Shown: positions 325-48,954 of the stretch, piece after piece | How positions within the stretch are numbered: the stretch's first letter is position 1 | Layout of the letters: each line of letters opens with the position of its first letter | NCBI GenBank assembly: GCA_950097015.1 | Contig: CATNEN010000033.1 | Coordinates: 3,100,001-3,164,000 of the forward strand | Origin: Macrostomum hystrix | Lineage: Eukaryota > Animalia > Platyhelminthes | DNA length: 64,000 bases | Direction of reading: 5' to 3' | Position numbers and translations under genes: made by a program | Notes under the pieces: model-generated | Databases searched by the model: none | What the model saw: only the letters and a program-made list of their open reading frames with translations | What the model was told of the DNA's origin: nothing

Positions 325-900
325 ATGTATTTTCGCGAAAATACCTTAAGATATAGCCACGCATATAACCTACTTTAATAACTTTTGCAAAAATACCGCC
401 AACTACCTTTGTTTAATAGCATAGCAGTATTTTCGCGAAAATACCTTAAGATATAGCCACGCACACAACTTCAAGAACTTTTGCAAAAATACCGCCAACT
501 ATCTTTGTTTAATAGCATAGCAGTATTTTCGCGAAAATACCTTAAGATATAGCCACGCATATAACCTACTTTAATAACTTTTGCAAAAATACAGCCAACT
601 ACCTTTGTTTAATAGCATAGCAGTATTTTCGCGAAAATACCTTAAGATGTAGCCATGCACACTACTTTAATAACTTTTGCAAAAATACCGCAAACTACCT
701 TTACTACCTGCGTTTAATAGGATAGCAGTATTTTCGCGAAAATACCATAATATGTAGCCATGCACACTACTTTAAGAACTTTTGCAAAAATACCGCCAAC
801 TACCTTTGTTTAATAGCATAGCAGTATTTTCGCGAAAATACCATAATATGTAGCCATTCACACTACTTTAAGAACTTTTGCAAAAATACCGCTATTTACT
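325..900. repeat. Tandem array (~6 copies) of a ~96-105 bp unit containing the perfect 18-bp palindrome GTATTTTCGCGAAAATAC and the palindrome TTTTGCAAAA
   Basis: TTTCGCGAAA recurs at ~331, 431, 527, 627, 732 and 828 with conserved intervening sequence. Confidence 0.9.
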
Positions 901-1275: not shown

Positions 1276-1893
1276 TCATACTCGCCGGTCCGGGTGATCG
1301 CCAAACACATTGCGTATTGGGTGGCATTGTCCATCGCATTGGTAGTCGGGCTTGAGAGAATGACCAACGAAGATGGAAACTACCGGACGCTTGTGCCCAT
1401 CAGGTGTCGGTTCTAATCGGCGCTGAAAGTCCTCCGAATACGCACTGACCGGAGCATGCCCAGCAAGCACTAATAGTCGATCGAGCCAAGAGACGTGTCG
1501 AATAGCCTTGTATTTGGCATTGACTTCAAAAGTGTCTCCATTGATCAATCGAAGTAGTGTGCACATGACTTCAGATGAGTCATCAAACAGATTCGGGCGT
1601 AGCTCGTCAATAAACATGGCAGTGTGTATAGTCTCGCAGAGCTTGTCAAACAGAAACGTGTTAGACCGCTTCTGCACCTGGACAGTCAGCACCTTCGTAG
1701 AACCGAGATGGCTTTGCACAGAGTGTGTCTTCCCAACGCCAGACGGGCCGTATAGATAGACGACACCAGTTGGCGATTGTAACGCTCTGCACACAGCCTT
1801 TACTGTTGGGCACACGTTAGTGGCGGCGATCAACCGGGGAACATGAGCGACGGCGGCATCAGGAAATTGGACAGCATCAGCAGCAGCAGGGAC
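1276..1893 (-). CDS. Gene A copy 1, exon 2: SF3 (AAA+) helicase domain, Rep/NS1-like
   Basis: Walker A YLYGPSGVGKT, Walker B MFIDE, B'-like LLRLINGDTFEVNAKYK, motif-C position LVLAGH and Arg-finger-like FQRRL. The frame is open up to the AG acceptor at 1894; 618 nt = 206 codons including the stop. Confidence 0.85.
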   Translation of the reverse strand, partial: VPAAADAVQFPDAAVAHVPRLIAATNVCPTVKAVCRALQSPTGVVYLYGPSGVGKTHSVQSHLGSTKVLTVQVQKRSNTFLFDKLCETIHTAMFIDELRPNLFDDSSEVMCTLLRLINGDTFEVNAKYKAIRHVSWLDRLLVLAGHAPVSAYSEDFQRRLEPTPDGHKRPVVSIFVGHSLKPDYQCDGQCHPIRNVFGDHPDRRV

Positions 1894-2038
1894 CTGTTGG
1901 ATGGTAGGTAGTTTTGCATATAATTAATTAATTGTCGATTGAGTTAATAATTTTTTGATTCAAAGGAACAGCAAAAATTCAATGATCAATACTTATAAGT
2001 GTGCTAAGTAATCTTATGGCTTATAATATTTTGCATAC
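1894..2038 (-). other. Predicted phase-0 GT-AG intron joining gene A exon 1 to the helicase exon (copy 1)
   Basis: Minus strand reads GAG|GTATGC...CCAACAG|GTC. The interior is AT-rich and splicing restores one reading frame. Confidence 0.75.
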
Positions 2039-4421
2039 CTCCAGCTGAGTAGGCAAGGTCGTCCTCGCATAGTCGGCTGTTGCAGCATCATCAGCAGCGG
2101 CGGCGGCGGCAGCGGCAGTAGGGCGACAGTTTTGGCAACCAGCTAGCACCTCTGTTGCTATTACGCGTTTCATCTGAGTCACCTTAAAGTAATCGCTGAG
2201 CTCTTGTCTGACACGAAAGTGTTCGAACATGAAGCCACTATCTAGCAAAGGCTCAGTTTTCGACGCCTCATGAGCAGCAACCCAGCAAAAGGCCTTGGCC
2301 AGCAAGCTGCACTCTTGAGTAGAAACGCGGAAAAGAGCTGGAAACTCGTCCGTACTGGTAACTAGCTTAATTGCACTTGACGCACTGCGTACACCAGACA
2401 CTGTCATTCTACACATTGTAGGATGCAGGTAGGCCGAAGCTTCCGCAGATTCCTCCATCAAAAGGGCATGCAGTCCGCAGTAAACAGTGTAACCATCTTC
2501 TGGTTGGCGCAGGTTCAGGAACATCAGCAAACCATTGGGATGATTCGGAGCTCCTAAACATTCACGGATTGACATGTTGTATTTCTGCTGACGACGCGCT
2601 CGGATTTCTTCGCTGGTCAGCATGTCAACCTGAATACATGATGTTGTGCCGATGGCAAACTGTGCACATGGAGCTACCAATTCATCTTCTAGAAACGCCT
2701 TGAATTTTTCCACATCGCTCGAGATGAATGCAATCTCTATAAGATGTAGCGTCCTTCTAGTCATAAGAACCGACCTGCCCTCTGCTGTTAAAGAGGCGTA
2801 GTCGGTAATTGGAGCTCGAGGACATAGAAGTGGTGATGTCGAACGACACAACGCATATTCATCGGCTATCGGAGCAAATGCCACGCCACCAACTTGCTGC
2901 TGCTGCTGTTGCCGCTGCTGCGGTTGTTGATCTCGCTGATGATGCTGCTGCTGCGATTGCTGCCGTCGTCCCGACTGTTGCGCTGTTGATTCAAAAGCGT
3001 CGACATACGCTGGAGAAAATACTGCGAGAGCTGGTTCATCATCATCGGATATTGTCCCATTCTCGATGACAGACATTGCCGGTGTAGAGCGAGGCGCATA
3101 ATCTGGCGAAGTCGGACAGGCACCAAGTGCGGCACTATTTTTAGGAATAGTCGACTCGCCATTTACGCGCAATAATTCTGCCACCTCTGTTTTGTACTTA
3201 TCATCGACTAGCTGCGATGATGAGGCTGAACTATTAGAGGCCGTCAAAACGGGGGCAGTATTTGACTCTACATTGTCTGTATTGCTGATGAAGTGGTGAT
3301 GTCGAACGACACAACGCATATTCATCGGCTATCGGAGCAAATGCCACGCCATCGTCTTGCTGCTGCTGCCGTTCACGCCCTTGTATCTGCTGCCGCAGCT
3401 GCTGCCGCCACTGCTGCTGCTGCGGCTGTTGCTGTGGTTGTTGCTCTCGCCGTTGATGCTGCTGCTGCTGCTGCTGCTGCGATTGCTGCAGTCGTCCCGA
3501 CTGTTGCGCTGTTGGTTGAGAAGCGTCGACATACACTGGAGAGAATACAGCGCGAACTGGTTCATCAGCATCGGATGTTGTCCCATTCTCGATGACAGAC
3601 ATTGCCGGTGTAGAGCGAGGCGCATAATCTGGCGAAGTCGGACAGGCACCAAGTGCGGCACTAGTTTTAGGAATAGTCGACTCGCCATTTGCGCGCAATA
3701 ATTCTGCCACCTCCGTTTTGTACCTATCATCGACTAGCTGCGATGATGAGGCTGAGCTATTAGAGGCCGTCAAAACGGGGGCAGTATTTGACTCTACATT
3801 GTCTGTATTGCTGATGAACTCGTCCATAATCTCCAGCTGTACGTCGTCTGCTAGCAAGTCGTCCGCTGATTCATCTTCAGATGATAGCACTTTAGGCGTG
3901 GACTCTATGCGATCAGCATGGTCGCCGGCGCCACAAATTGGTTGGGCAGCAATAACCAGAGGCTGTCGCATGGCTACTAGAGATCCAACGCCAGTGTCTT
4001 CAGCATCAGACGACGATGAATTGCTAGACGAAGCATCCAAATCGACAACTGTACGCGTCCGCTTGCGTAGAGTCGATCGGGCATATCGACGCTTCCGAAT
4101 TGCACTCGATAGGACAGTCTGCTTCGGCTGCTGCTGCTGCTGCTGCTGTTTCGACTGCTGCTGCTGCTGTTGCTGCTGTATTACTGCAAGGCGGGGAACA
4201 GTGAAGGCAGCCGATGCCCGACCAGCCGTTCCTGCCATTGCTGTAAATGATGCCGATGATGCTTGCACACTCGGTCTAGATGCTGCGCCAGTAGGACGAT
4301 CGGTTGACTGCTGAGATCTAAAGTAGTCCACGATCATAGTCTGGCGTAGACCATTAGCATCCGGTGTAGCAATGCTGGCATCCACACGAGCCTTCTTTCC
4401 ACGGCCACGAAATGCTGACAT
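2039..4421 (-). pseudogene. Gene A copy 1, exon 1, frameshifted by an internal ~460-bp tandem duplication
   Basis: ORFs 3234-4433 and 2021-3325 together match the single ORF 14538-16409. The segment ISNTDNVES...RSTSP occurs twice, with a junction at ~3292. Confidence 0.8.
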
Positions 4422-4902
4422 TTCAAAATTCAAGTCGAGGCGTAGGAATTAACTCGTAATTACTCGGTCGGTCAGTCAGTCGGTCACAAAGTAGATGTTA
4501 AGCGCGCTCAGTCTTACATAGCTCACTTTTGCGACTGTACTCAACTGTAGTTCTAGATTTGACTACAGACAAAACTTTTTTTCGCGAAAATTCACTCGTG
4601 TGTATTGCAATCCCCAATTCGCAAATACTAATAGATAAAATTTCTATGGCTATTTCGCGAAAAAACCATTACAAGTATATAGACTAGCCATGTTAATTCA
4701 ATTACTTTCGCAGTATACTTTACTACTTCAGGTGCAATCGGCACTACTATAAGTAATATTGCAGTAGTAAGTCAACATTAATAATAATGGGGATCCACAC
4801 AAAAAGTGTGGATTCCAATATAAAAAAAACTGATTCCTAGTAAAAATTTATTTTCATTTCTAGTATAATGTTGCCTATTTTTTTTAAATAAAAAAATGCG
4901 TT

Positions 4903-4974
4903 GGGGTGAATGGGATTCGAACCCGAGCCACTTGTACTAGCGACAATGCATTAGACCTGCATGCCAGTTCACTA
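4903..4974 (-). ncRNA. tRNA-like Pol III unit 1 (tRNA-derived; non-canonical anticodon arm)
   Basis: Minus strand: A-box-like TGGCATGCAGGT, D stem GCAT/ATGC, B box GGTTCGAATCCC, 5-bp GTGAA/TTCAC pairing, then a T7 tract about 8 nt downstream. Confidence 0.55.
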
Positions 4975-5576
4975 ACAATAAAAGTGTGTGTTGTCTGGCT
5001 ATTTATATTGCTTTTCTTTCGCATGTTGTATTCTTATGAACCTTTTGCAAAAATACTGCCCTTACCTTTGTTTTGGGAACATAGCAGTATTATCGCGAAA
5101 ATTCTGTGTCTTAGACAATAGAAATGTCTATGTCTATTTCGCGAAAATACCATCTAAACTATCACAAGTATATAGACTAGCCATGTTAATTCAGTTACGT
5201 TCGCAGTATACTTTACTACTTCAGGTGCAAGCAGCACTACTTCAAGTACTATTGCGCAACTATGCATTTAATATTGTTTGAATACACATTTGTACTTTCG
5301 CGAATATATACCGGCTGCTGTAGCCGCACAATCTCAGATTTATTTGCATAAGTACGGCAGTAAAAGACAAGACACTTCGTCTGAAAAAATTCGCAAAAAG
5401 ACATGTGTCCCAAATGAAAGTAAAGGCATTATCAAAAGGAATTAACTGGCGTATTCGAGCAAAAGTACGTTAATAATAATGGGGATCCACAAAAAGTGGG
5501 GATTCGAATATAAAAAAGACTAATTTTAATTTTCATTGATAGTAGAATGTTAGCTGCTTTTTTAATAAAAAAAAGT

Positions 5577-5650
5577 AGGGCTGACTGGGATTCGAACCCG
5601 AGCCACTGGTATTAGAGAGAAATGCCTTAGACCTGCACGCCAGATCACTA
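5577..5650 (-). ncRNA. tRNA-like Pol III unit 2
   Basis: Diverged paralog of unit 1: TGGCGTGCAGGTCTAAGGC...GGTTCGAATCCC followed by a T8 tract. Confidence 0.5.
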
Positions 5651-6047
5651 ACAATCAAATAGTGTGTTATCTGGCTATTTATATTTATTTTCTTTCGCAT
5701 GTTCGAGTTTTAATGACGTTTGTCTGCAAATGGTGAAATCTTGACCACTAATACAATTTTTTTTCTAACAGACTGATAATATTTATTCAGCGAATATAGA
5801 GAGTACTTCAGGAATGTTTTGCAAAAATACTACCCTTATCTTTGTTTTGGAAACATATCAGTATTTTTGCGAAAATACTTTAATTCATGAATATGCATAG
5901 ACAATAAATACACTTTTCGCGAAAATACCAGCATTTGAGTCTATTCGCAGCCAAGTCAGTTTTCGAATCGACATCCATCACATATATGTACGGATATGTG
6001 ATTCAGGCAGCCGATGCTGCTTGCCCACTCGGTCTATACGTATAAAC

Positions 6048-11479: not shown

Positions 11480-12046
11480 ATGCCTACATCAACATCATCA
11501 TCAGGGCCAACTCTAAACGATGCGGAACGAAACGAATCCAACTGTCACGACGATGACGTTAAGCTGAATGAAGAGCCAGGCTATGATGACTACGGGTATG
11601 ATGAAACATACAATTCAACATACAGTTTTGTATTCGGCCTGGCAGACGACCATTTGTTATACGCCGTAGCTGAAGAGGTCGAAGCGGCGATGGCAGCCAA
11701 TTGCTTTGACCCAGCTGATGACGAGCTTTTGTATGCAGCAGCTGAAGAGGGGGAGGCGTCAGCAGCAGCGGCAGCGACGGCAGCCAGTAGCTGTTTATTT
11801 GACCCAGCTGATGACGAGCTTTTGTATGCAGCAGCTGAAGAGGCGGAGGCGTCAGCAGCAGCGGCAGCGATGGCAGCCAGTAGCTGCTTGTTTGACCCAG
11901 CTGATGACGAGCTTTTGTATGTCGCAGCTGAAGAGGCGGAGGCGTCAGCAGCAGCGGCAGCGATGGCAGCCAGTAGCTGTTTATTTGACCCAGCTGACGA
12001 CTGCCTATTGTATGCCGGAGCTGAAGAGGCGGAGGCATACGTTTGA
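11480..12046 (+). CDS. Gene E copy 1: acidic protein with ~31-aa DPADDELLYAAAEEAEASAAAAAMAASSCLF repeats
   Basis: ATG ORF; four paralogs with in-frame repeat-number variation. Confidence 0.7.
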   Translation: MPTSTSSSGPTLNDAERNESNCHDDDVKLNEEPGYDDYGYDETYNSTYSFVFGLADDHLLYAVAEEVEAAMAANCFDPADDELLYAAAEEGEASAAAAATAASSCLFDPADDELLYAAAEEAEASAAAAAMAASSCLFDPADDELLYVAAEEAEASAAAAAMAASSCLFDPADDCLLYAGAEEAEAYV

Positions 12047-12529: not shown

Positions 12530-13140
12530 TGTATTTTCGCGAAAATACCATAATATATAGCCATGCACACACCTACTTTAAGAACTTTTGCAAAAATACC
12601 GCCAACTACCTTTGTTTAATAGCATAGCAGTATTTTAGCGAAAATACCATAAGATGTAGCCATGCACACTACTTTAAGAACTTTTGCAAAAATACTGCCC
12701 TTACCTTTGTTTAGAGCATATCAGTATTTTCGCGAAAATACCATAAGATGTAGCCATGCACACTACTTTAAGAACTTTTGCAAAAATACCGCCAACTACA
12801 TCTGTTTAATAGGATATCAGTATTTTCGCTAAAATACCATAATATATAGCGATGCACACACCTACTTTAATAACTTTTGCAAAAATACCGTCAACTACCT
12901 TTGTTTAATAGCATAGCAGTAGTTTCGCGAAAATACCATAATATGTAGCCATGCACACCACTACCTACTTTAATAACTTTTGCAAAAATACCGCCAACTA
13001 CATCTGTTTAATAGCATAGCAGTATTTTCGCGAAAATACCATAATATGTAGCCATGCACACTACTTTAAGAACTTTTGCAAAAATACTGCTCTTACCTTC
13101 GTTTTGAGAACATATCAGTCTTTTCGCTAAAATTCCGTAT
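12530..13140. repeat. Second array of the ~96-bp palindrome-containing unit
   Basis: Same unit as 325-900; sequence from ~12184 onward repeats window position 1 onward. Confidence 0.9.
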
Positions 13141-13755
13141 TTACTTTCGGTTTAGAAGTCGTTATTTTTTTTTCGCGATAACACCTATAAATGAATTTTA
13201 TTAATCAATGCTTTGACACTTTGCATATACCTTCGTTTGAAGATAGTAATACTATATATAGAAAAATTGCACATAAGACCCAGTTGAGGACGAGCTTTTG
13301 TATGCCACAGCTGAAGGAAGCAGAGGCGTCATAACGTCAGAATGTAAAATAATACAATCACTATGATTCATTATGCAGTTATATTATAAATCTACTGATT
13401 ATCGTAACTATTGTTTGTATTTTTATGCATGCAAACGCTCAATACATTTATTGTATTCGTGTTGGGCTTCATTAATCAGTCAATTGACTACAATTAGCAA
13501 GAAATAAGATTTTTTTGCAACAGAAGTAGCAATTACCTACTTCACAACAATAAAAGCTCAAAACTGAGCATATAAATTGATTTTATTTGTATGACTAATT
13601 ATAAAATTGCATACAAAAACAGTATGAAACAGTAAAAAATATAAAAAAACAGCTGAAAGACTGACTGAATGACCGAGTAAAAATATAGTCGACAAAATAG
13701 CAGCATGCAGGCAGTTTAGTGTAAAAAAATCCTGCTAACAGCACCGTCTTGTCGC

Positions 13756-14397
13756 TCATACTCGCCGGTCCAGGTGATCGCCAAACACATTGCGTATTGG
13801 GTGGCATTGTCCATCGCATTGGTAGTCGGTACTGAGGGAATGACCAATGAAGATGGCAACTACCGGACGCTTGTGCCCATCAGGTGTCGGTTCTAATCGG
13901 CGCTGAAAGTCCATCGAATACGCACTGACCGGAGCATGCCCAGCAAGCACTAACAGTCGATTGAGCCAAGAGACGTGTCGAATAGCCTTGTATTTGGCAT
14001 TGACTTCAAAAGTGTCTCCATTGACCAAACGAAGTAGTGTGCACATGACTTCAGATGTGTCATCAAACAGTTGCGGGCGTAGCTCGTCAATAAACATGGC
14101 AGTGTGTATAGTCTCGCAGAGCTTGTCAAACATAAACGTGTTAGACCGCTTCTGCACCTGGATATTCAGCACTTTCGTAGAACCGAGATGGCTTTGCACA
14201 GAGTGGGTCTTCCCAACGCCAGACGGGCCGTATAGATAGACGACACCAGTTGGCAATTGCAACGCGCTGCACACAGCCTTTACAGTTGGGCACACGTTGG
14301 TGGCGGCGGCGATCAGCCGGGGAACATGAGCGACGGCGGCATCAAGTACTTGAACAGCAGTAGCAGCGGAAGCAGCAACATCAGCAGCAGCAGAGAC
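13756..14397 (-). CDS. Gene A copy 2, exon 2: SF3 helicase domain
   Basis: GPSGVGKT, FIDE, LLRLVNGDTFEVNAKYK and FQRRL are present; 642 nt = 214 codons including the stop, open up to the acceptor. Confidence 0.85.
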   Translation of the reverse strand, partial: VSAAADVAASAATAVQVLDAAVAHVPRLIAAATNVCPTVKAVCSALQLPTGVVYLYGPSGVGKTHSVQSHLGSTKVLNIQVQKRSNTFMFDKLCETIHTAMFIDELRPQLFDDTSEVMCTLLRLVNGDTFEVNAKYKAIRHVSWLNRLLVLAGHAPVSAYSMDFQRRLEPTPDGHKRPVVAIFIGHSLSTDYQCDGQCHPIRNVFGDHLDRRV

Positions 14398-14555
14398 CTG
14401 TTGGATGGTGTTGTGTTGTTAGGTAGGTTCGCATACAATTAATTAATTAATTGTCCAAAAGTAATAATTATTTGAATTAAAACAACAGCAAAAATTCAAT
14501 GATCAATACTCGTACGTGTGCTAAAAAATGTCATGTATTATAATATTTTGCATAC
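14398..14555 (-). other. Predicted phase-0 GT-AG intron (gene A copy 2)
   Basis: GAG|GTATGC donor, CCTAAC branch point, CCAACAG|GTC acceptor. Confidence 0.8.
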
Positions 14556-16409
14556 CTCCAGCTGAGTAGGCAAGGTCGTCCTCGCATAGTCGGCTGTTGC
14601 AGCATCATCAGCAGCGGCGGCGGCGGCAGCGGCAGTAGGGCGACAGTTTTGGCAACCAGCTAGCACCTCTGTTGCTATTACGCGTTTCATCTGAGTCACC
14701 TTAAAGTAATCGCTGAGCTCTTGTCTGACACGAAAGTGTTCGAACATGAAGCCACTATCTAGCAAAGGCTCAGTTTTCGACGCCTCATGAGCAGCAACCC
14801 AGCAAAAGGCCTTGGCCAGCAAGCTGCACTCTTGAGTAGAAACGCGGAAAAGAGCTGGAAACTCGTCCGTACTGGTAACTAGCTTAATTGCACTTGACGC
14901 ACTGCGTACACCAGACACTGTCATTCTACACATTGTAGGATGCAGGTAGGCCGAAGCTTCCGCAGATTCCTCCATCAAAAGGGCATGCAGTCCGCAGTAA
15001 ACAGTGTAACCATCTTCTGGTTGGCGCAGGTTCAGGAACATCAGCAAACCATTGGGATGATTCGGAGCTCCTAAACATTCACGGATTGACATGTTGTATT
15101 TCTGCTGACGACGCGCTCGGATTTCTTCGCTGGTCAGCATGTCAACCTGAATACATGATGTTGTGCCGATGGCAAACTGTGCACATGGAGCTACCAATTC
15201 ATCTTCTAGAAACGCCTTGAATTTTTCCACATCGCTCGAGATGAATGCAATCTCTATAAGATGTAGCGTCCTTCTAGTCATAAGAACCGACCTGCCCTCT
15301 GCTGTTAAAGAGGCGTAGTCGGTAATTGGAGCTCGAGGACATAGAAGTGGTGATGTCGAACGACACAACGCATATTCATCGGCTATCGGAGCAAATGCCA
15401 CGCCACCAACTTGCTGCTGCTGCTGTTGCCGCTGCTGCGGTTGTTGATCTCGCTGATGATGCTGCTGCTGCGATTGCTGCCGTCGTCCCGACTGTTGCGC
15501 TGTTGATTCAAAAGCGTCGACATACGCTGGAGAAAATACTGCGAGAGCTGGTTCATCATCATCGGATATTGTCCCATTCTCGATGACAGACATTGCCGGT
15601 GTAGAGCGAGGCGCATAATCTGGCGAAGTCGGACAGGCACCAAGTGCGGCACTATTTTTAGGAATAGTCGACTCGCCATTTACGCGCAATAATTCTGCCA
15701 CCTCTGTTTTGTACTTATCATCGACTAGCTGCGATGACAAGGCTGAACTATTAGAAGCCGTCAAAACAGGGGCAGTATTCGACTCTACATTGTCTGTAGT
15801 GCTCGTCCACTCGTCCACAATCTCCAGCTTTACGTCATCAGCTAGCAAATCGTCCGTGTCCTTAGCTGAGTTATCTTCAGGTGATAACACTATAGGCGTG
15901 GACTCTCTGCGATCAGTATGGTCGCCGGCGCCACCAATTGATTGGGCGGCAATAATCAGAGGCTGTCGCATGGCTACCAAAGATCCAACGCCAGTGTCTT
16001 CAGCATCAGACGACGATGTACTGCTAGACGAAGCATCCAAGTCGACAACTACACGCGTCCGCTTGCGTAGAGTCGATCGGACACGTCGACGCTTCTGAAC
16101 TGCGGTTGTAATAACAGTTCGCTGCTGCTGCTGCTGCTGCTGCTGCGCTTGCTGTTGCTGCTGTACTACTGCTGCACGGCGGGGAACATTGAAGGCAGCC
16201 GATGCCCGGCCAGCCGTTCCTGCCAGTGCTGCGAATGATGCCGATGCTGCTTGCCCACTCGGTCTAATTGAGTTGCCAGTAGGACGATCGGTTGACTGCT
16301 CAGATCTAAAGTAGTCCACGATCCTAGTCTGGCGTAGACCATTAGAATCCGATGTAGCAATGCTGGCATCCACACGAGCCTTCTTACCACGGCCACTAAA
16401 TGCTGACAT
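14556..16409 (-). CDS. Gene A copy 2, exon 1 (618 codons): basic/Gln-rich disordered N-terminus plus a ~230-aa globular domain; ~831 aa after splicing
   Basis: Uninterrupted ATG ORF 14538-16409, in frame with the helicase exon after splicing. Confidence 0.75.
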
Positions 16410-16756: not shown

Positions 16757-17355
16757 AGAGTTTACGGACTTAGAGAATTTTATCATGTCAGTGATAAAAT
16801 TTTCGACCGTCCCCAGAGCTTAGTTGGTGTGGCTGGTGGCTGGTAAATGCTATACATGCAGGTATATATATATACTCTTAAGAAAAGTGCGCGAGCTGTT
16901 TTTTCGCTACTCGACGTCGTCGGCATAGCTAGGGCCTAGTATAGCCGGGCTGGCTTGCTAGCTTGCCACTGAACGGGGAAACCCCGGGCGATTCTATTTT
17001 TAGCAAAGCTGCTACTCCACGGAAAAACCGCGCAGGCGCACCTTTCTTAAGAGTATATACTGACTTGCGTGTCCCATAGACTTACATGGCTGCCACTTGA
17101 ATACACACACGAGCCGCGTCTATACTCTTAAGAAAGGTGCGCCTGCGCGGTTTTTCCGTGGAGTAGCAGCTATCCTATATGCTGACGTCAACTAGCGAGG
17201 CCGCATATACACGGCGGGAATATATACGGCGCGCACCTTTCTTTAGAGTATATACTAGCTGGCTCGCTCTATCCCGCCCCGATCTCACTACACTATTTAA
17301 GCCTTGGGACGGTCGAGAATTTACGTTTATAAATTCTCTAAGTCCATAAACTCTT
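16757..17355. repeat. Nested palindrome H1 (copy 2), with a core hairpin at 17007-17171
   Basis: Perfect 51-bp arms at 17007-17057 and 17121-17171. The 63-nt loop is the reverse complement of the copy-1 loop. Confidence 0.9.
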
Positions 17356-18224
17356 ATAATTGGAGTGCTGCATGGTGTGGTGTGGTGTGGTGTGTGGTGT
17401 GGTGTGGTGTGTGGTGTGGTGTGGTGTGTGGTGTGGTGTGGTGTGTGGTGTTGGGTGGGTGGATGCAGAGTGCAGGTGCAGGTTGGGTAGGTGGTGCATG
17501 GTGTCTCACTCTCATATCCTCCCTTCACTCTGTCCTAGCTTCCTCTCCTACCTTCGCTTTCCTCCCCTCCCTTTCTTCCTATTCCTTCGATCTGATCCTC
17601 TCTTCACTCTCCCTCGCTATCAATTTCCTCCTGTACTATCCTCCAAATATGTTTTCGCAAAAGTAACACATCAGTACAATGAATCAATAAATACAATGAA
17701 TCAGTCGTACGAATTTGGGTGGGTGGATGCAGAGTGCAGGTGGTTGGGTAGGTGGTGGTGTCTCACTCTCATATCCTCCCTTCACTCTGTCCCAGCTTCC
17801 TCCCCTACCTTCGCTTTCCTCCCCTTCCTTTCTTCCTATTCCTTCGATCTGATCCTCTCTTCACTCTCCCTCGATTTCACTATCCTCCAATTATGTTTTC
17901 GCGAAAGTAACACGTCAATGAATGGTACCAGAGTGCTTTTGTTGGAACGATCAGTTGAGATCAGTTCGAAGAAACTGAAGCATCCAAAGCCAAAAACCAA
18001 AGCCGAAATCCAAATTTGCAGCTTCTTCTAGCTGCAACTCACTGACTAGCCAGTTTCTGCACTGCTATAGCTACTACTTACAGCAGGCGCATGCGTAGCT
18101 GAAAAGACATTTTTTATCTCCTTAGTGTATTTCTTGCACACGTCTATGGCTGTAAATAGTAGCGCGCAAAAAGCCGAATGACCTTTTTTTGATCTCCGTA
18201 GTGTATTTCTAGTGTATCTAGAAG

Positions 18225-19105
18225 ATAGCGCAGATGAATCAGGCATCATCTATGCAACAAGTTATGACGAGCCTGCTGAACATGTGAGCCAAGCGGACAG
18301 CGTGTCAATTGGATCAGTACGGCATCCAATTTGTACATCTACTCCGCTTAATCACAATGCGATTGAAGCAGCAGCAGAAACAATCCAATCGGATCACTCG
18401 CCAGTACCATCGCCATCAATGCCAATGTTGCAAATTGAGCCAATCGGATCACCAGCGATGCCTATGTTGCCGATTCCAACTGTCGAGGTGCCGTATTTCG
18501 TTCCGGTGCCGCTACCTGTTTTTATTCCTGTCTGTGCGCCAAGAGTAACAACAGCGACAGTTGGTGTCAGTGCACAAAACAGTGTGACCGATGTTTCAAT
18601 CGAAGCCAATGTCAGCACGCAGTCAGTGTGTATTGGTACATCATCCGGTCACGGTGATGACATTGAAATGGCGCAGATTCTGCTCGACTTGATGCAACCT
18701 GCCGCTATGCAAGTTCTGTCTACCAATACGGATTGTGTTGCTGCTGCTGCTGGATCGGATTTCGCTGCCCATTCCGAAGCAAGTCACATCGATGATATGT
18801 TTGATGTCGCAATGGAGATCATCATTGCTGATGTCAACAACGTTTCGGATGAACGGCTATCCGGTGTGACATTGCCGCAAGGAGATGCCGATGCCGCAGC
18901 AGAATTGATTCTGACCGCCGACCTTGACGACGATGTCGCAATGTCAATAAGTGATGTGCAGTCATCGCAATCTACCATACCTGCGACTGATGCCTTGCAT
19001 GCATCTAGACGCTCGTATTGTATATGCACACACAATATATTGACTACGACAGTGTCAAGACACGGCCGATTGATCAAGACGCGACAATGTCTGTGCGGCA
19101 ATTGA
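18225..19105 (+). pseudogene. Gene F, 5'-truncated copy
   Basis: Matches 41001-42134 from EDSADES onward; fused at ~18215 to unrelated upstream module sequence. Confidence 0.65.
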
Positions 19106-26039: not shown

Positions 26040-26639
26040 ATGCCTGCATCACCATCATCATCAGCGCCAACTCTAAACGATGCGGAAACATCCAACTGTC
26101 TCGACGAGGACGTTGGGCTGAACGAAGAGCCAGGCTATGATGATTACGGGTATAATGAAACATACAATTCATCATATGGTTTTGTATTCGGCCTGGCAGA
26201 TGACCATATGTTATACGCCGTAGCTGAAGAGGTCGAAGCGGCGATGGCAGTCAATTGCTTAGACCCAGCTGACGACGAGCTTTTGTATGCCGCAGCTGAA
26301 GAGGCAGAGGCGTCAGCAGCAGCAGCAGCAGCAGCAGCGATGGCAGCCAGTAGCTGTTTATTTGACCCAGCTGACGACGACCTTTTGTATGCCGCAGTTG
26401 AAGAGGCAGAGGCGTCAGCAACAGCAGCAGCAGCGATGGCAGCCAGTAGCTGTTTATTTGACCCAGCTGACGACGACCTATTGTATGCCGCAGCTGAAGA
26501 GGTAGAGGCGTCAACAGCATTAGCAGCGATGGCAGCCAGTAGCTGCTTATTTGACCCAGCTGACGACTGTCTATTGTATGCCGCAGCTGAAGAGGCGGAG
26601 GCGTCAGCAGCAGTAGCGATTGCAATTGAGGAGGCATAA
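26040..26639 (+). CDS. Gene E copy 2 (199 aa)
   Basis: Homologous ATG ORF with four repeats. Confidence 0.7.
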   Translation: MPASPSSSAPTLNDAETSNCLDEDVGLNEEPGYDDYGYNETYNSSYGFVFGLADDHMLYAVAEEVEAAMAVNCLDPADDELLYAAAEEAEASAAAAAAAAMAASSCLFDPADDDLLYAAVEEAEASATAAAAMAASSCLFDPADDDLLYAAAEEVEASTALAAMAASSCLFDPADDCLLYAAAEEAEASAAVAIAIEEA

Positions 26640-30324: not shown

Positions 30325-30825
30325 ATGCCTGCATCACCATTATCATCAGCGCCAACTCTAAACGATGCGGAAACATCCAACTGTCACGACGAGGACGTTG
30401 GGCTGAACGAAGAGCCAGGCTATGATGACTACGGGTATGATGAAACATACCATTCATCATATAGTTTTGTATTCGGCTTGGCAGATGACCATATGTTATA
30501 CGCCGTAGCTGAAGAGGTCGAAGCGGCGATGGCAGTCAATTGCTTAGACCCAGCTGACGACGAGCTTTTGTATGCCGCAGCTGAACAGGTGGAGGCGTCA
30601 GCAGCAGCAGAAGCGATGGCAGCCAGTAGCTGTTTATTTGACCCAGCTGACGACTGCCTATTGTATGCCGCAGCTGAAGAGGCGGAGGCGTCAGCAGCAG
30701 CAGCAGCGATGGCAGCCAGTAGCTGCTTATTTGACCCAGCTGACGACTGCCTATTGTATGCCGCAGCTGAAGAGGCGGAGGCGTCAGCAGCAGCAGCGAT
30801 GGCAGTTGAGGAGGCAAAAGTTTGA
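30325..30825 (+). CDS. Gene E copy 3 (166 aa)
   Basis: Homologous ATG ORF with three repeats. Confidence 0.7.
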   Translation: MPASPLSSAPTLNDAETSNCHDEDVGLNEEPGYDDYGYDETYHSSYSFVFGLADDHMLYAVAEEVEAAMAVNCLDPADDELLYAAAEQVEASAAAEAMAASSCLFDPADDCLLYAAAEEAEASAAAAAMAASSCLFDPADDCLLYAAAEEAEASAAAAMAVEEAKV

Positions 30826-31269: not shown

Positions 31270-31495
31270 TATGCATGTATTTTCGCGAAAATACAGCATA
31301 ATTGATGTAGCCATGCACACTACTTCAAGAACTTTTGCAAAAATACCGCCAACTACCTTTGTTTAATAGCATATCAGTATTTTCGCGAAAATACCATAAG
31401 ATGTAGCCATGCACACTACTTTAAGAAGTTTTGCAAAAATACTGCCCTTACCTTTGTTTAGAGCATATCAGTATTTTCGCGAAAATACTATATAT
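31270..31495. repeat. Short array of the ~96-bp palindromic unit
   Basis: GTATTTTCGCGAAAATAC occurs three times with the unit sequence. Confidence 0.85.
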
Positions 31496-35176: not shown

Positions 35177-35394
35177 TGTAAGAGCCGGCGAAATTTAGAT
35201 TGTCAGAAAGTACGCACGAGTTTATTTGGCATAACGATTCAATATATACGAGCAGGGCAGTGATGAGCACGATGAATAATAAAATAGGCTAAAGCCAGCC
35301 CCACCCCCAAGCGGGTGAAAGGCCGACGCCATGTACATTTAGACCAATCAGACAAGACGAGCCAACGCACAACACACCATGCAGGAACCCCACA
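35177..35394 (-). repeat. 3' LTR of the Gypsy element
   Basis: Direct repeat of 40053-40263, adjacent to the PPT. Confidence 0.95.
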
Positions 35395-35524
35395 TTACTC
35401 TCCCCCAAGAAAAGCGCAAGGGGAAGCAACAAAAAAAGGCAATAAAACACAACGAAAAAAATTCAAAATGCATAACAAAAATAGTCCAAAAACTACAGTC
35501 CCTGTCACACAGTACCTAACTTGG

Positions 35525-38500
35525 CTACCAAGACGCTCTGAAATAGTCAGGAGGTCGCCGCTGCCTTCCTGAGCGACGGGGCCCTCCCTGACACTCGCTA
35601 GCCGCGGGCTCGCGCAGCAACTCCCAGGTGCCAGGGCCGTCCAGCTCCGGGTCGTGGCTCGCGTCAGCGGCTGCTGGAAGGGCCGCCGGCTGGCTCGCCG
35701 GCTGGGTCGCCGGCTGCGCCGCCGGCTGGGTCGCTGCGTTGTCAGTTCGGCTGACGAACGGCTTCATTCGATCATGGTGCACCAATAATTTACGCCTGCC
35801 GTTCTCGGAGCGCACTCGGTAGTTCACGGGGCCGACCTTCTTGATGATGGTGTACGGGCCGGACCACCTGTTCGATAGTGACTTACACTGGCCGCGCTTC
35901 ATCGCCTGGTTCGTCAGCATCACCAGGTCCCCGACCTTAAACTCGACAGTCTCGGCGCCTCGGTTGTAAAACGCGTGCTGAGAGCTTTGAGCTGATTGCA
36001 GATTCGCTCGGACCACCTGAAAGCCGCGTCGGATTCTTGCCTGGATGTCCTCGCAGCTCCTCGGCAGGTCCTGTTGCCCTTGGACACCGAGCAGCAGGTC
36101 TGCGGGCTGTCGCGGCTCCATGCCCCGCAGAACCTTGAAGGGCGACTCGCCCGTAGAGCTGTGCGCCGAGCTGTTGTAAGCCCACACAACGTAGGGTAGC
36201 AGAATGTCCCAGCTGGTCTGGTTCGCTGCGCAGAAAGCTGACAGCATGTTGCCTAACGTTCGGTTGAACCTCTCGACGTTGCCGTTGCCACTGGGATGAA
36301 ACGGTGATGTCCTCGACTTCTCTGTGCCCAGCAGTGCGCAAGTCTCCTTGAACAGCTCGGCCTCGAACTGCCGACCCTGGTCCGAGTGCACGACTTCCAG
36401 AACACCGTGTCGCAGTACCACGGCAGTCACCAGGGCCTCAGCCACCGTCTTGGCGTCGATCTGGCTAAGGGCTGCCGTTTCAACCCATTTTGAGAAGGTG
36501 TCAACAAAGCACAGAATGTAGCGCTTACCAGACGCGGTGGCCGGCAAGGGTCCCTTAATGTCAAGCTGCACGATTGACCACGGTCGGGCAGGCAACGGCT
36601 GCCGCACGAGCTCGGCACGGGCTCTCTTCGGCGCTCCCTTCCGGCGCTGGCAGACCGTACAGCTGCGCACCCAGTCTCGTACGTCTTCGCGCATTTCCGG
36701 CCACCAGGCGCGAGCTTGCAGCGCTCGCAGAACTCGACGTTGTCCTAGATGCCCGGCGCTAGGCAGGTCATGCGCCTGTTGCAGCAGCTCCTCACGCATG
36801 TGCTGAGGAATCACTGGCAGCCCGTTGTGAAGCAGCGCGCCGGCCGGTGACATCGACAGGCCAGGCATCAGTCTGTGAACCGCCGAACTCACAGCAGCAG
36901 GGACCTGGAAGTCGGGCTGTAGCATCGCCTGACGGGCCGCGTGTAGAATCTGGTCCAGGTCTTGCTCTTCCGGCAGGTTGGCGGTCTTAAATTGCACCGC
37001 GGCTGCTCGGCTAAGAGCGTCCGGCACGATGTTCTCCTTGCCAGGCCGGTAAAGGATCTCCAGCGGAAACTCCTGGATGAGCTGCAGCCAGCGCGCCAAC
37101 CGTCCCGCAGGCTCCTTGGTGTTCAGCAGTCCGATGATCGGCTTGTGGTCGGTGAACAACTGGATACGGCTGCTATTACTCAGGTACATTCGAAACTGCT
37201 TGAGACTCCATACCACGGCCAGGAGCTCTCGGTCCGTGGTGCTGTAGTTGCGCTCGGCCTTGCTCAGCGTTCTGGAGGCATAGGCCACCGGCAGATCCTC
37301 GCCGTCTCGCTCCTGGCTGAGCACCGCACCCAAAGCGACGGCACTGCTGTCACAGCTGATGGTAACGGGTCGATTGAAGTCTGGCAGCTGGAGCACGGGA
37401 GCCTGGGTAAGAGCATCCTTCAGCTTGGCTAGTGCTGCCGCATGCTCGTCTGTCCATGCGAAACCCCCAGCGCTTTTCTGTGCCAGATGGTGCAGCGGCT
37501 TGGCGATGTCGGAGAAGTTGGGCACAAACCGGCGGTAGAAGCTCAGCATGCCGAGGATGCGCCGGACGTCCTGGTCCGACCGCGGGTCTGGCATCTGTCT
37601 GATCGCCTCGACCTTCTCTGCCGACGGTGCGATGCCGCTCTCGGAAACCTCGTGGCCCAGGTAGGTGACCTTCCGATAGGCGAAGAAGCTCTTGCCAGGG
37701 TTCAGCTTCAGTTTGGCGGACCGCAGACGCTGAAGAACATTGGACAACGACTGGAGATGACTCCCGAAGTCCTTGTTGAAGATGATGAGATCGTCGATAT
37801 AGGCGATGACCTCCTCCCAGCTGAGCCCTGTCATAATGAGTTCCATCATGCGCTGATAGGTTGCTGGCGCATTGCACATGCCAAATCCCATTTTCCTGAA
37901 CTGCATCAAGCCGCTCGGAGTGTAGAAAGCAGTTAACGGCCGGTCCTCCTCCCTGACTTCCACCTGGAGGAAGCCTTGTCGCATGTCGATGGTAGAAAAC
38001 CAGGTGCAGCCAGCCAGAGAGTCGAGTGCCTGGTGCAAGTGCGGCAGCGGGTGAGCATCCTTGACAGTGAGGCTGTTTAGCGCTCGCCAGTCTACGCAGA
38101 CTCGGATGTCATTGTTCTTCTTCCTGACGATCATGAGATTGCTGGCCCATGGGCTTGAAGACGGCTCGATGACGCCATGTTTTTGCATTTGAGCAAGCTT
38201 CTCGTCCACTTGCTTCCTGAAGGCGTGCGGCACACGACGGGGTCGCTGACGAATCGGATGTGCGCAGTCTTCCAGCTCGATCTTGTGTTGTGCAGCGCCA
38301 CTCGTCCCTACGTCGAATTCGTGTGCCGAGACCACATCGGCGAACTGTGCCAGCAGAGCCTTTAGTCGGTCGCCGTCGACTGCTGGCAGATCCGGGTTGA
38401 TGTTGAATTGGTCCGCAGGGCCTCGCCAGTCGTGCAAGTCCTCGTCCTCCTCGACGATATCGGCGCTCTCGAAGGTTCCGATGTTCTGGTTGGAGTACAG

Positions 38501-39205
38501 CGTGACTGGAGTGCATCCCAGATTGCACACCCGCACTGGGATTCTTCCATCGTTCGAAGACACTGCGAACACTCGGCAGGGCAGCACTCCAGTTTTGTCA
38601 ACGAACTCCTGGGAAGGTTCGAAAATGCCCTGGGCCTGCTTTGTTTCGATTGCCACCTTGACAACCTTCGTCGCTCTCGGCGGCACGACTACAGCGTCTT
38701 GAACTCGGGCGATGAGCACCGTGGGAACCATGCAGCAGGACGACGACGCTCCTCGTTCAGACTCGGTGCTGCTGAACGGGACGGAAGCCTTGTCAAAGGT
38801 AACCGTCTGGGCCTTCTGGTCGATGCTAAATTGCGATGAAGCCATCCTGCTGATGAAGTCCATTCCAAGGATGAAGTCAGGCCGAATTCCTTTCACCACC
38901 AGCACTTCGAGATGGCTGGTCAGCTGCTTGCCCAGTCGCACCGACAGGCTTATACTGCCCAGCAGCTCGAGGGTGGTGCCATCCACCGATACCGGTTTAA
39001 CCTCTGCTGGTTTCAGGTCGTTGCTGACCCCAAGCGATCTCACGGCGATGTCGCTGATAAGAGATGTCTGCGCTCCGGTGTCCAGCAGCCACCGGCACGG
39101 CATGCCATTCGCTAGGCCAGGAATAAAAATAGCATGCAGAACGGGATTGCTCCTGTGGGTTGGTGTGGGTCCCGCACCCGTCGCACCAACCCTTAGAAGT
39201 TTCCC
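35525..39205 (-). CDS. pol: Pol polyprotein (protease, RT, RNase H, integrase), probably expressed by a -1 frameshift
   Basis: LLDTGA protease, YIDD RT, RNase H (CDSS...DRELLAVVW...DALSR), integrase HHCC and QLDIKGP; integrase follows RNase H (Gypsy order). Confidence 0.95.
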   Translation of the reverse strand, partial: GKLLRVGATGAGPTPTHRSNPVLHAIFIPGLANGMPCRWLLDTGAQTSLISDIAVRSLGVSNDLKPAEVKPVSVDGTTLELLGSISLSVRLGKQLTSHLEVLVVKGIRPDFILGMDFISRMASSQFSIDQKAQTVTFDKASVPFSSTESERGASSSCCMVPTVLIARVQDAVVVPPRATKVVKVAIETKQAQGIFEPSQEFVDKTGVLPCRVFAVSSNDGRIPVRVCNLGCTPVTLYSNQNIGTFESADIVEEDEDLHDWRGPADQFNINPDLPAVDGDRLKALLAQFADVVSAHEFDVGTSGAAQHKIELEDCAHPIRQRPRRVPHAFRKQVDEKLAQMQKHGVIEPSSSPWASNLMIVRKKNNDIRVCVDWRALNSLTVKDAHPLPHLHQALDSLAGCTWFSTIDMRQGFLQVEVREEDRPLTAFYTPSGLMQFRKMGFGMCNAPATYQRMMELIMTGLSWEEVIAYIDDLIIFNKDFGSHLQSLSNVLQRLRSAKLKLNPGKSFFAYRKVTYLGHEVSESGIAPSAEKVEAIRQMPDPRSDQDVRRILGMLSFYRRFVPNFSDIAKPLHHLAQKSAGGFAWTDEHAAALAKLKDALTQAPVLQLPDFNRPVTISCDSSAVALGAVLSQERDGEDLPVAYASRTLSKAERNYSTTDRELLAVVWSLKQFRMYLSNSSRIQLFTDHKPIIGLLNTKEPAGRLARWLQLIQEFPLEILYRPGKENIVPDALSRAAAVQFKTANLPEEQDLDQILHAARQAMLQPDFQVPAAVSSAVHRLMPGLSMSPAGALLHNGLPVIPQHMREELLQQAHDLPSAGHLGQRRVLRALQARAWWPEMREDVRDWVRSCTVCQRRKGAPKRARAELVRQPLPARPWSIVQLDIKGPLPATASGKRYILCFVDTFSKWVETAALSQIDAKTVAEALVTAVVLRHGVLEVVHSDQGRQFEAELFKETCALLGTEKSRTSPFHPSGNGNVERFNRTLGNMLSAFCAANQTSWDILLPYVVWAYNSSAHSSTGESPFKVLRGMEPRQPADLLLGVQGQQDLPRSCEDIQARIRRGFQVVRANLQSAQSSQHAFYNRGAETVEFKVGDLVMLTNQAMKRGQCKSLSNRWSGPYTIIKKVGPVNYRVRSENGRRKLLVHHDRMKPFVSRTDNAATQPAAQPATQPASQPAALPAAADASHDPELDGPGTWELLREPAASECQGGPRRSGRQRRPPDYFRASW

Positions 39206-40019
39206 TGGGCCTTGGATGGGCAGACGGAGGCTTTGTGCCCCTTCCCTGAGCATTTGTGACAGATGATTGGGCCCAGCTTCTTCTCGCGCTGGCGACAATG
39301 AGCTGCCAGGTGCCCGGGCTGACCGCAGCTGAAGCAGGCGCCTGCTCGTTGGTGCCGGCGTCGCCGAGGATCGCTGCCTGGCTGCACGCTGACCCTGGCG
39401 ATGAGCTCCTCCATGCACCGCTCCAGCCGATCGAGGCGGTCAGATGTCGCATGAATTTCCGTAGTAGTGGCGCCAACAGCCTTGACTGCTGTAACTGATG
39501 GTCGCCCTACCAGACCTTCCAGTCGGGCTGCTCGCTGCAGCATAGACTCCAGGCTGCAAGTCTCCGCGTCCTCTGCCTTTAAAAGGCTGTCGCGGATGTC
39601 AGGATTGAGCAGGTGCAGAAGCTTGAAACGCACGTCCCGATCTCGCTGCTGTGTTGAATCGTTCGGCCTGGCCTTCTGATGAAGCAGCCTCAGGTTAAAG
39701 CACAGCTCGCGTAGCGTCTCGTTCTCTCCGCGCTTCCTTGCGTGGAATGTGTTCATGGCCTTGAAGCTGTCAGACTCGCCACCATAAAATTTTGTAAGCG
39801 CGGTTTCAATTTCCTTGTAGCTCTTCTGCTTCGTCGGCTCGAGATCCCAGACGATCAGTTGCGCCTCTCCAGTGAGCAACAGTTTGACTTTTGACGCCGA
39901 TGTTTCGTCGTCCCACTTTGCATCCTGGCTGAATTCCTCAAACATACGCAGCCATCTTCGCACGTCAGTGTCGTCTGTGCCACTAAACTTTGGCGGCATA
40001 AGTGCATTTGAGTAGGCCA
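39193..40019 (-). CDS. gag: Gag with two CCHC zinc knuckles (probable start MAYSNALM; the listed ORF extends into the LTR)
   Basis: CFSCGQPGHLAAHC and CHKCSGKGHKASVC; PPKFSG motif. Confidence 0.9.
39199..39205 (-). promoter_or_regulatory. -1 ribosomal frameshift slippery heptamer G GGA AAC
   Basis: X XXY YYZ pattern in the gag frame just before its stop; a -1 slip enters the pol frame (GKLLRV). Confidence 0.8.
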
Positions 40020-40052
40020 TTAGAGCTCTGGGTTCTAGCTCGCTGCCACCAA

Positions 40053-48950: not shown

Positions 48951-48954
48951 TGTA

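What the first reader, a model, noticed from the sequence alone, without database searches (positions are those of the whole stretch)
13756..16409. Hidden intron fuses a 618-codon orphan ORF to an SF3 helicase, giving an ~831-aa Rep/NS1-like protein
Seen: the ORF track shows two separate ORFs, but both copies carry GAG|GTATGC and CCAACAG|GTC at equivalent positions (introns 14398-14555 and 1894-2038). Splicing is in frame in both, although the intron interiors and the exon-2 start differ in length by multiples of 3. Exon-2 substitutions between copies are mostly conservative and spare Walker A, Walker B, B' and the Arg finger. Established: Rep/NS1 proteins have an origin-binding/nuclease domain N-terminal to the SF3 helicase. 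Inference: this is an expressed, selected initiator-helicase.
Basis: partly seen in the sequence, partly recalled or inferred. Interest (0 to 1): 0.85.

Follow-up and report, generated by a model that had tools for sequence, protein, structure and literature searches.

The report
Spliced orphan gene with SF3-like helicase
Two neighbouring reading frames on the minus strand are almost certainly one two-exon gene for an 831-residue protein that ends in a small viral-type (SF3-like) helicase domain, but nothing shows the nuclease half of a true Rep/NS1 initiator, and expression and selection remain unproven.

Summary
On the minus strand, a 618-codon ORF (16409..14556) and a 213-codon ORF (14397..13756) are separated by a 158-nt AT-rich GT..AG segment. 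A second copy carries a 145-nt equivalent (2038..1894).

Evidence for the intron:
- Stops in all three frames, and GC 0.28 against 0.51 in the exons.
- No ATG upstream of Walker A in exon 2.
- One relative has a phase-0 GTATGC intron at nearly the same place.
- A Macrostomum lignano (flatworm) relative has both parts contiguous.

Exon 2 folds as an SF3-like AAA+ core. Its best structural matches are papillomavirus E1, AAV Rep, and CRESS Rep/parvoviral NS1 helicase domains. It stays below Pfam thresholds and lacks a conserved sensor-1 Asn.

Exon 1 is an orphan. About 350 residues look disordered, followed by a family-specific domain with no HUH or catalytic-Tyr motif.

Copy 2 is intact and copy 1 has one break. 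dN/dS between copies is about 0.66 and not significant, but exon-2 indels are all in frame.

Only five relatives turned up among 1.84 billion proteins. Verdict: the splice model is well supported, "SF3-like helicase" is supported by fold, and "Rep/NS1 initiator, expressed and selected" is not shown.

The parts
13756..16409 (-). Copy 2 of the gene, intact: exon 1, intron and exon 2, for a predicted 831-residue product
14556..16409 (-). Copy 2 exon 1, 618 codons from ATG. There is no database family and no homologue at full length.
15360..16409 (-). Exon 1 residues 1-350. Disorder-prone, with poly-Gln runs and basic patches that look like nuclear localisation signals (inference).
14592..15038 (-). 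Exon 1 residues 458-606. This is the only part of exon 1 conserved in relatives: a family-specific domain directly upstream of the helicase, fold unknown.
   Evidence: model failed
14398..14555 (-). Copy 2 intron, 158 nt, GT..AG, phase 0, GC 0.28, stops in all three frames
13756..14397 (-). Copy 2 exon 2, 213 codons plus stop: SF3-like AAA+ helicase core. No ATG lies upstream of Walker A.
14269..14292 (-). Conserved Cys-x6-Cys pair upstream of Walker A (exon 2 residues 36-43), present in most family members
14206..14229 (-). Walker A P-loop (exon 2 residues 57-64)
14083..14097 (-). Walker B (exon 2 residues 101-105; F102 and D104 invariant)
13993..13995 (-). Invariant Lys135 at the tip of the predicted beta-hairpin (B'-like)
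13897..13899 (-). Invariant Arg167, candidate arginine finger
13804..13842 (-). Invariant His186, Cys194 and Cys198 cluster at the C-terminus. Possibly metal-binding (inference).
13582..13587 (-). AATAAA 169 nt after the stop, at the same distance in copy 1 (1102-1107). Candidate poly(A) signal; weak evidence in AT-rich DNA.
1276..4421 (-). Copy 1 of the gene, broken once: one internal tandem duplication in exon 1 that changes the frame, with no in-frame stops. The start codon, intron signals and exon 2 are intact.
1894..2038 (-). Copy 1 intron, 145 nt, same donor and acceptor motifs, phase 0
12531..13087 (.). Neighbour: 96-99-nt tandem array (5.7 units), each unit holding an 18-nt perfect palindrome, about 670 nt downstream of the gene. 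The same array follows copy 1 (327-892). It also occurs at 31277-31492 and 48484-48951 without the gene.

Best explanation
This is a two-exon, nuclear-type gene present in two tandemly duplicated copies.

Shown:
- A canonical phase-0 GT..AG intron joins a 618-codon exon to a 213-codon exon.
- Copy 2 is intact. Copy 1 has one break.
- Exon 2 carries Walker A, Walker B, an invariant hairpin Lys and an invariant Arg. Its predicted fold is closest to SF3 helicases.
- The family is tiny: two Macrostomum lignano loci and three environmental contigs.

Inferred:
- The product has about 350 disordered residues with NLS-like basic patches. A family-specific folded domain (about 351-606) follows, then a flexible Ala-rich linker that holds the intron site, then the helicase core.
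- The core most likely works like Rep/E1-type SF3 motors: a ring-forming ATPase whose hairpins pull DNA through a central channel.
- It most likely descends from a Rep-type helicase of an unknown small DNA virus, plasmid or mobile element that became resident in flatworm-like genomes.
- It carries no recognisable HUH nuclease, so it is a helicase without the nicking half of an initiator.
For: Intron:
- Searches show the motifs.
- One search shows the GC drop, stops in all frames and only 2-3 possible in-frame pairs.
- One search shows the intron is the most diverged segment (86.7% identity). All 4 of its gaps are non-3n, while both exon-2 gaps are 3n.
- The first Met of exon 2 lies after Walker A.

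One protein:
- In M. lignano locus L001, stretches matching exon 1 residues 458-517 and 520-570 lie collinear with the helicase, and the second is contiguous with it (tblastx E 1.9e-6).
- In contig L002, an upstream frame matches exon 1 residues 511-606 (E 3e-5). A CAG|GTATGC...CAG phase-0 intron follows, 40 residues before the conserved Cys pair, against 35 in the window.

Helicase:
- The AF2 model has pLDDT 72.7, with the core at 84-92.
- Foldseek against PDB puts papillomavirus E1, vientovirus Rep, AAV Rep40/68 and the SaPI5 primase-helicase on top.
- In BFVD, every named hit among the top 50 is a Rep, NS1 or SF3-helicase protein of a small DNA virus, with one giant-virus Rep-like protein. 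About 20 of the 50 carry no name.
- Pfam RNA_helicase and DUF5906 align over Walker A to B'.
- Invariant columns are listed.

Frame constraint:
- There are 2 gaps in 618 nt of exon 2, against 11 gaps in 437 nt of intron plus 3' flank. By my arithmetic, Poisson p is about 2e-5.
Against: - There is no transcript evidence.
- dN/dS between copies is 0.66-0.69 and not significant.
- Copy 1 and all three inspected relatives are damaged or truncated, as in decaying insertions.
- SF3 membership fails at the sequence level. Pfam hits are below cut-off, and PDB sequence and profile searches return only generic P-loop hits.
- TM-scores are moderate (0.42-0.53), and RuvB, MCM and ClpX score close behind.
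- The sensor-1 Asn is not conserved.
- The M. lignano relative has no intron, and the intron site lies in an unalignable linker, so positional homology with L002 is approximate.
- AT-rich flanks may be more indel-prone than coding-like DNA.
Confidence: 0.6

Rival explanations
1. Decaying endogenous insertion. Both copies would be non-functional remnants of an integrated virus-like or mobile-element gene. The AT-rich 145-158-nt segment would be a neutral insertion that only happens to look like an intron.
For: - Copy 1 is broken.
- dN/dS does not differ from 1.
- The M. lignano loci are truncated or frame-shifted, and L002 has an in-frame stop.
- The gene sits in a highly repetitive block next to an 11-kb satellite.
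Against: - Copy 2 keeps 831 codons open.
- GT..AG removal restores the frame in both copies despite the 13-nt length difference.
- Exon-2 indels are rare and all 3n, while the intron and the 3' flank have 11 non-3n gaps.
- An analogous phase-0 intron with the same extended donor is present in L002.
Confidence: 0.2
2. Replication gene of a larger resident element. The 12-17-kb repeated unit would itself be an integrated replicon or giant transposon. The helicase would act on the palindrome-bearing 96-nt arrays as its origin.
For: - The gene is followed in both copies by a tandem array whose units hold an 18-nt perfect palindrome.
- The units are arranged head to tail.
Against: - Two further arrays (31277-31492 and 48484-48951) have no helicase gene.
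- No other virus-like or transposase gene was found in the unit.
- In M. lignano only the gene is shared, and it lies between cellular genes.
- No nuclease motif is present.
Confidence: 0.12
3. Full Rep/NS1-type initiator: an HUH nuclease and origin-binding domain in exon 1 fused to the SF3 helicase.
For: - A folded-looking domain sits directly N-terminal to the helicase.
- The nearest folds of exon 2 are Rep/NS1 helicases.
Against: - There is no HUH, HUQ, YxxK or YxxxY motif anywhere in exon 1.
- There are no Pfam or PDB hits.
- A His-x-His seen at one aligned site in L002 is not kept in the window protein or in P0002.
Confidence: 0.08

Closest known systems
SF3 helicase domains of Rep (Cressdnaviricota, vientovirus) and NS1/Rep (Parvoviridae, including AAV Rep40/68)
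   Same: - Small AAA+ core without a lid.
- Walker A and B, a hairpin with a basic residue, and a trans-acting Arg candidate.
- These are the best Foldseek matches (E 4e-7 to 1e-5, TM 0.42-0.53).
- The domain sits at the C-terminus, after another domain and a linker.
   Different: - No significant sequence match to any of them.
- No HUH nuclease motifs upstream.
- Sensor-1 Asn is not conserved.
- Extra conserved Cys-x6-Cys and His/Cys/Cys clusters.
- A 350-residue disordered N-terminus.
- The gene is interrupted by a spliceosomal-type intron and sits in a cellular-type genome.
Papillomavirus E1 and SaPI5/D5-type primase-helicases (Pfam DUF5906, RNA_helicase)
   Same: These are top PDB fold hits (7apd, 1tue, 2v9p, 7ola). 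The sub-threshold Pfam alignments span Walker A to B'.
   Different: Those proteins are much larger and carry their own origin-binding or primase domains. Nothing equivalent was detected here.
Endogenous viral elements derived from Rep/NS1 genes in animal genomes (from my own knowledge of the literature, not tested here)
   Same: A lone replication-protein gene in a host genome. The M. lignano relative lies between COG7 and EME1/MUS81-type genes. Copies are in various states of decay.
   Different: Known elements of this kind are recognised by clear sequence similarity to exogenous viruses, and this family has none. Copy 2 is intact and has an intron.

Membership tests
SF3 helicase (AAA+) | Walker A P-loop | tested here: met
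   Exon 2 residues 57-64. Conserved in every member that covers the site.
SF3 helicase (AAA+) | Walker B acidic motif after a hydrophobic strand | tested here: met
   F102 and D104 are invariant. The strand is E100-106 in the model.
SF3 helicase (AAA+) | B' beta-hairpin with a basic residue between Walker B and motif C | tested here: met
   Predicted hairpin E130-134/E137-142 with invariant K135. This rests on the model only.
SF3 helicase (AAA+) | Motif C with sensor-1 Asn at the end of the next strand | tested here: not met
   After strand E148-153 the members show Ala-Gly-His, Ala-Asn-Val or Ala-Ala-Val. No Asn is conserved.
SF3 helicase (AAA+) | Arginine finger after motif C | tested here: met
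   R167 is invariant, in helix 162-168.
SF3 helicase (AAA+) | No C-terminal AAA+ lid domain | tested here: met
   The protein ends about 30 residues after the last strand.
SF3 helicase (AAA+) | Passes a curated SF3 family model (Pfam RNA_helicase, DUF5906, Parvo_NS1 and the like) | tested here: not met
   Scores are 17.5 against 21.5 bits and 15.7 against 27.6 bits. No other SF3 model was reported. The PDB profile search gave P-loop hits only.
SF3 helicase (AAA+) | Fold closest to solved SF3 helicases | tested here: met
   E1, vientovirus Rep and AAV Rep are the top PDB hits. The named BFVD top-50 hits are almost all Rep/NS1. TM-scores are only 0.42-0.53, and other AAA+ proteins follow closely.
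Rep/NS1 initiator (HUH endonuclease plus SF3 helicase) | HUH (or HUQ) metal-binding motif | tested here: not met
   No match in the 618 residues of exon 1.
Rep/NS1 initiator (HUH endonuclease plus SF3 helicase) | Catalytic Tyr motif (YxxK or YxxxY) | tested here: not met
   No match.
Rep/NS1 initiator (HUH endonuclease plus SF3 helicase) | Nuclease or origin-binding fold N-terminal to the helicase | tested here: inconclusive
   The model of residues 344-618 failed at pLDDT 34. There were no Pfam or PDB hits.
Rep/NS1 initiator (HUH endonuclease plus SF3 helicase) | Partner capsid gene and an origin hairpin in the same unit | tested here: inconclusive
   No capsid-like ORF was found. Palindrome-bearing arrays lie nearby but also occur without the gene.
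Spliceosomal GT-AG intron | GT..AG bounds that restore one frame, in both copies | tested here: met
Spliceosomal GT-AG intron | Non-coding character: composition shift, stops in all frames, non-3n indels | tested here: met
Spliceosomal GT-AG intron | Shared with relatives | tested here: inconclusive
   Present at a near-equivalent place and phase in L002. Absent in M. lignano P0002.
Spliceosomal GT-AG intron | Junction reads in transcripts | not testable with these tools
   No expression data are available.
Endogenous viral element | Sequence homology to a protein of an exogenous virus | tested here: not met
   The only relatives are cellular or environmental contigs. The likeness to viruses is structural only.

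The most novel reading that the evidence does not exclude
This would be a previously undescribed, flatworm-associated family of host-resident, intron-bearing helicase genes. They would descend from the SF3 motor of an unknown small DNA virus or plasmid lineage. The HUH nuclease would have been replaced by a new N-terminal domain and a long disordered region, and the intact copy would be kept for a cellular or element-maintenance role.
Probability: 0.3. Interest if true: 0.6.

Novelty: new variant of a known kind. Interest (0 to 1): 0.45.

Why it matters
If the gene is expressed, it would be a rare case of a viral-type SF3 motor living as a spliced cellular-style gene without its nuclease partner. 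Its family is so diverged that only structure reveals the kinship. It would add a lineage to the map of Rep-type helicases and a data point on how captured genes acquire introns. If it is only a decaying insertion, it is an ordinary genomic fossil of an unknown donor.

Tried and rejected
- **Exon 1 homologue searches:** the full-length search and the search on residues 345-618 both found nothing, and poly-Gln words may have swamped the first.
- **Family libraries:** Pfam, PHROGs and NCBIfam on both exons gave only generic P-loop or sub-threshold hits.
- **Solved structures by sequence:** PDB sequence and profile searches named no SF3 protein. The profile of the exon-1 domain found nothing.
- **Model of exon 1 residues 344-618:** it came out at pLDDT 34 and is unusable, so no fold search was run on it.
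- **Exact look-up of the window's 623-residue ORF:** it is not on record.
- **RNA genes:** Rfam and tRNA scans found none.
- **Divergent partner (capsid-like) gene upstream:** the ORFs at 17175-18031 are translated microsatellite. The ORF at 18212-19105 has no family. Rejected.
- **Shared synteny with M. lignano:** tblastx shows only the gene itself is shared.
- **P0003 and P0004:** the P0003 contig had no DNA available. The P0004 contig (L003) was too short to inform on an intron.
- **Literature:** the searches found nothing on this family.
- **P0006:** rejected as a spurious low-complexity hit.
Full report
**Observation**

The feature lies on the minus strand.
- In copy 2, a 618-codon ORF starts at the ATG at 16409 and reaches a GAG|GTATGC site at 14556/14555. 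Its frame stops 15 nt later.
- A CCAACAG|GTC site lies at 14398/14397. A 213-codon frame runs from there to the stop at 13756.
- Copy 1 has the same two motifs, with the intron at 2038..1894. Its exon 2 at 1893..1276 is open for 205 codons.
- The start of exon 2 differs by 24 nt, in gaps of 3 and 21.
- The two exons sit in different genomic frames in each copy, and in different ways. Removing GT..AG restores one frame in both copies.

**Is it an intron?**

- The segment has GC 0.28 against 0.51-0.52 in the flanking exons.
- It carries 3-4 stops in every frame.
- Only 2-3 in-frame GT..AG pairs are possible in the region at all.
- It is the most diverged piece between the copies, at 86.7% identity. 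All four of its gaps are non-3n. Exon 2 is 94.8% identical and has two gaps, both 3n. The 3' flank is 94.2% identical and has seven gaps, none 3n.
- From those numbers, 11 gaps in 437 non-coding nt would predict about 16 gaps in the 618 nt of exon 2. Two were seen, which gives a Poisson p of about 2e-5 by my arithmetic. The caveat is that AT-rich DNA is more indel-prone.
- Exon 2 has no Met before Walker A, so it cannot be a gene on its own.
- AATAAA follows the stop at 169 nt in both copies. This is weak evidence.

**Relatives**

An exhaustive HMMER search of exon 2 against 1.84 billion representative proteins found five true relatives.
- P0001 and P0002 come from the flatworm Macrostomum lignano.
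- P0003 and P0004 come from JGI metagenomes.
- P0005 comes from an ENA assembly.
- A sixth hit is a spurious repeat protein.
- The word-index search added nothing new.

In M. lignano locus L001, the gene lies between cellular genes with COG7 and EME1/MUS81 domains.
- Stretches matching exon 1 residues 458-517 and 520-570 lie collinear, just upstream of the helicase.
- The second stretch is contiguous with the helicase in one frame, without an intron.
- There is one change of frame further upstream (tblastx E 1.9e-6).

In contig L002, the frame upstream of P0005 matches exon 1 residues 511-606 (E 3e-5).
- That frame continues, with one in-frame stop, to a CAG|GTATGC donor.
- A (TG)n run and a pyrimidine-rich CAG acceptor follow, and then the helicase exon in phase 0.
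- That intron lies 40 residues before a conserved Cys-x6-Cys pair. In the window the distance is 35 residues, also in phase 0.

So relatives show both that the two parts belong to one protein and that an intron in this linker is not unique to the window. Because the linker cannot be aligned, positional identity is approximate.

**The helicase domain**

By sequence it is only a P-loop protein.
- Pfam RNA_helicase scores 17.5 bits against a cut-off of 21.5, and DUF5906 scores 15.7 against 27.6. Both alignments span Walker A to B'.
- PDB sequence and profile searches, PHROGs and NCBIfam give generic ATPases.

The seven-sequence alignment has these invariant columns: H70, L93, H98, F102, D104, L121, L122, L124, K135, R167, H186, C194 and C198.

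The AlphaFold model has mean pLDDT 72.7, with the core at 84-92.
- It shows a five-strand core with a hairpin carrying K135 and a helix carrying R167.
- It has no lid domain.

Fold comparison:
- Foldseek against PDB puts papillomavirus E1, vientovirus Rep, AAV Rep40/68 and the SaPI5 primase-helicase on top, at E 7e-6 to 9e-5 and TM 0.42-0.46.
- RuvB, MCM and ClpX follow closely.
- Against BFVD, every named hit in the top 50 is a Rep, NS1 or SF3-helicase protein of a small DNA virus, with one giant-virus Rep-like protein. E-values run from 4e-7 to 6e-6.
- BFVD is rich in such proteins, so this ranking is suggestive and not decisive.

The sensor-1 Asn of motif C is not conserved. The family also has its own Cys-x6-Cys and His/Cys/Cys clusters. 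I therefore file the domain as "works like an SF3 helicase", not as a member of any curated SF3 family.

**Exon 1**

- There is no Pfam family and no homologue at full length.
- Residues 1-350 are 72-84% polar or small residues, with poly-Gln runs and basic patches.
- Residues 351-600 are more hydrophobic.
- Only residues 458-606 are conserved in relatives.
- No HUH, HUQ, YxxK or YxxxY motif occurs.
- A His-x-His in L002 at one aligned site is not kept in the window protein or in P0002.
- The structure model failed at pLDDT 34.
- The nuclease and origin-binding half of a Rep/NS1 initiator is therefore not shown, and its defining motifs were tested and not met.

**State of the copies and selection**

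- Only two copies exist in the window.
- Copy 2 is intact.
- Copy 1 (1276..4421; start codon kept) is broken once. An internal tandem duplication in exon 1, re-using about 153 codons, changes the frame. There are no in-frame stops.
- Divergence between the copies is mosaic. The 3' 1.2 kb of exon 1 is 99.5-99.8% identical, while the 5' part, the intron, exon 2 and the flanks are 87-95% identical. This points to a recent gene-conversion tract ending just inside the intron.
- dN/dS is 0.66 in exon 2 (p = 0.21). It is 0.69 in the 5' piece of exon 1 (p = 0.06). It is 0.15 in the converted piece, on only six changes.
The in-frame indel pattern and the deep conservation of motifs do suggest constraint on exon 2.

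**Context**

- The window is a mosaic of head-to-tail repeated segments in units of about 12-17 kb.
- Both gene copies are followed by 96-99-nt tandem arrays. These arrays also occur twice without the gene.
- A young Ty3/gypsy element interrupts one unit.
- The last 11 kb is a G-free 20-nt satellite.
- No other virus-like gene was found near the helicase.
- No RNA genes were found.
- The source organism is not identified. No contig looked human.

- Exons were handled apart and by reference.
- **Collection scans:** scans of the viral and metagenome contig collections were left out, because I could not tell whether they would fetch viruses of animals.
- **Phylogeny:** the phylogeny against named parvoviral, CRESS or bidnaviral proteins was left out for the same reason.

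2. So do the outputs, made in part before I knew these loci were broken. The report gives counts only.
I afterwards ran the local PDB-profile and Pfam scans on the same translations, and both found nothing. Those tools state no such limit, but I flag it.

Noticed in passing
window 52697-64000: An 11.3-kb array of 565 units of a 20-nt repeat with virtually no G on the + strand (GC skew about -0.99). It runs to the end of the window.
   Followed up: partly
window 327-892, 12531-13087, 31277-31492, 48484-48951: Tandem arrays with a 96-99-nt period. Each unit holds an 18-nt perfect palindrome and a second shorter palindrome. Two arrays follow the helicase gene and two stand without it.
   Followed up: partly
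window 11705-12036, 26262-26617, 30547-30797: Tandem repeats with a 93-96-nt period (a multiple of 3) inside ORFs that are open on both strands, Ala/Glu/Asp-rich. There is no Pfam family for the ORFs tested.
   Followed up: partly
window 35244-40263: Young Ty3/gypsy LTR retrotransposon. It has 151-nt LTRs that are 99% identical, an open 383-residue gag-like ORF with a zinc knuckle, and an open 1297-residue pol (protease, RT, RNase H, integrase). It is inserted into one of the repeated units.
   Followed up: partly
window 1-52600: The whole region is a mosaic of head-to-tail repeated segments in units of roughly 12-17 kb, at 70-99% identity. The helicase gene is present in only two of them.
   Followed up: partly
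window 14556-15800 against 2039-3290: The 3' part of exon 1 is 99.5-99.8% identical between copies, while everything around it is 84-95% identical. This looks like a recent gene-conversion tract that ends about 20 nt inside the intron.
   Followed up: partly
window 4556-5821: About 1.27 kb upstream of copy 1 has no counterpart upstream of copy 2. It is probably an insertion.
   Followed up: no
P0001 (M. lignano, UniRef A0A1I8FT91): This gene model fuses a shortened helicase-like piece to a rhodopsin-type receptor segment. The helicase piece lacks the stretch between Walker A and B and has an altered Walker B. The model is probably an annotation chimera over a decayed copy.
   Followed up: no
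window 17175-18031: ORFs of 117-223 codons on both strands that are only translated GT-rich microsatellite. They are not genes.
   Followed up: yes
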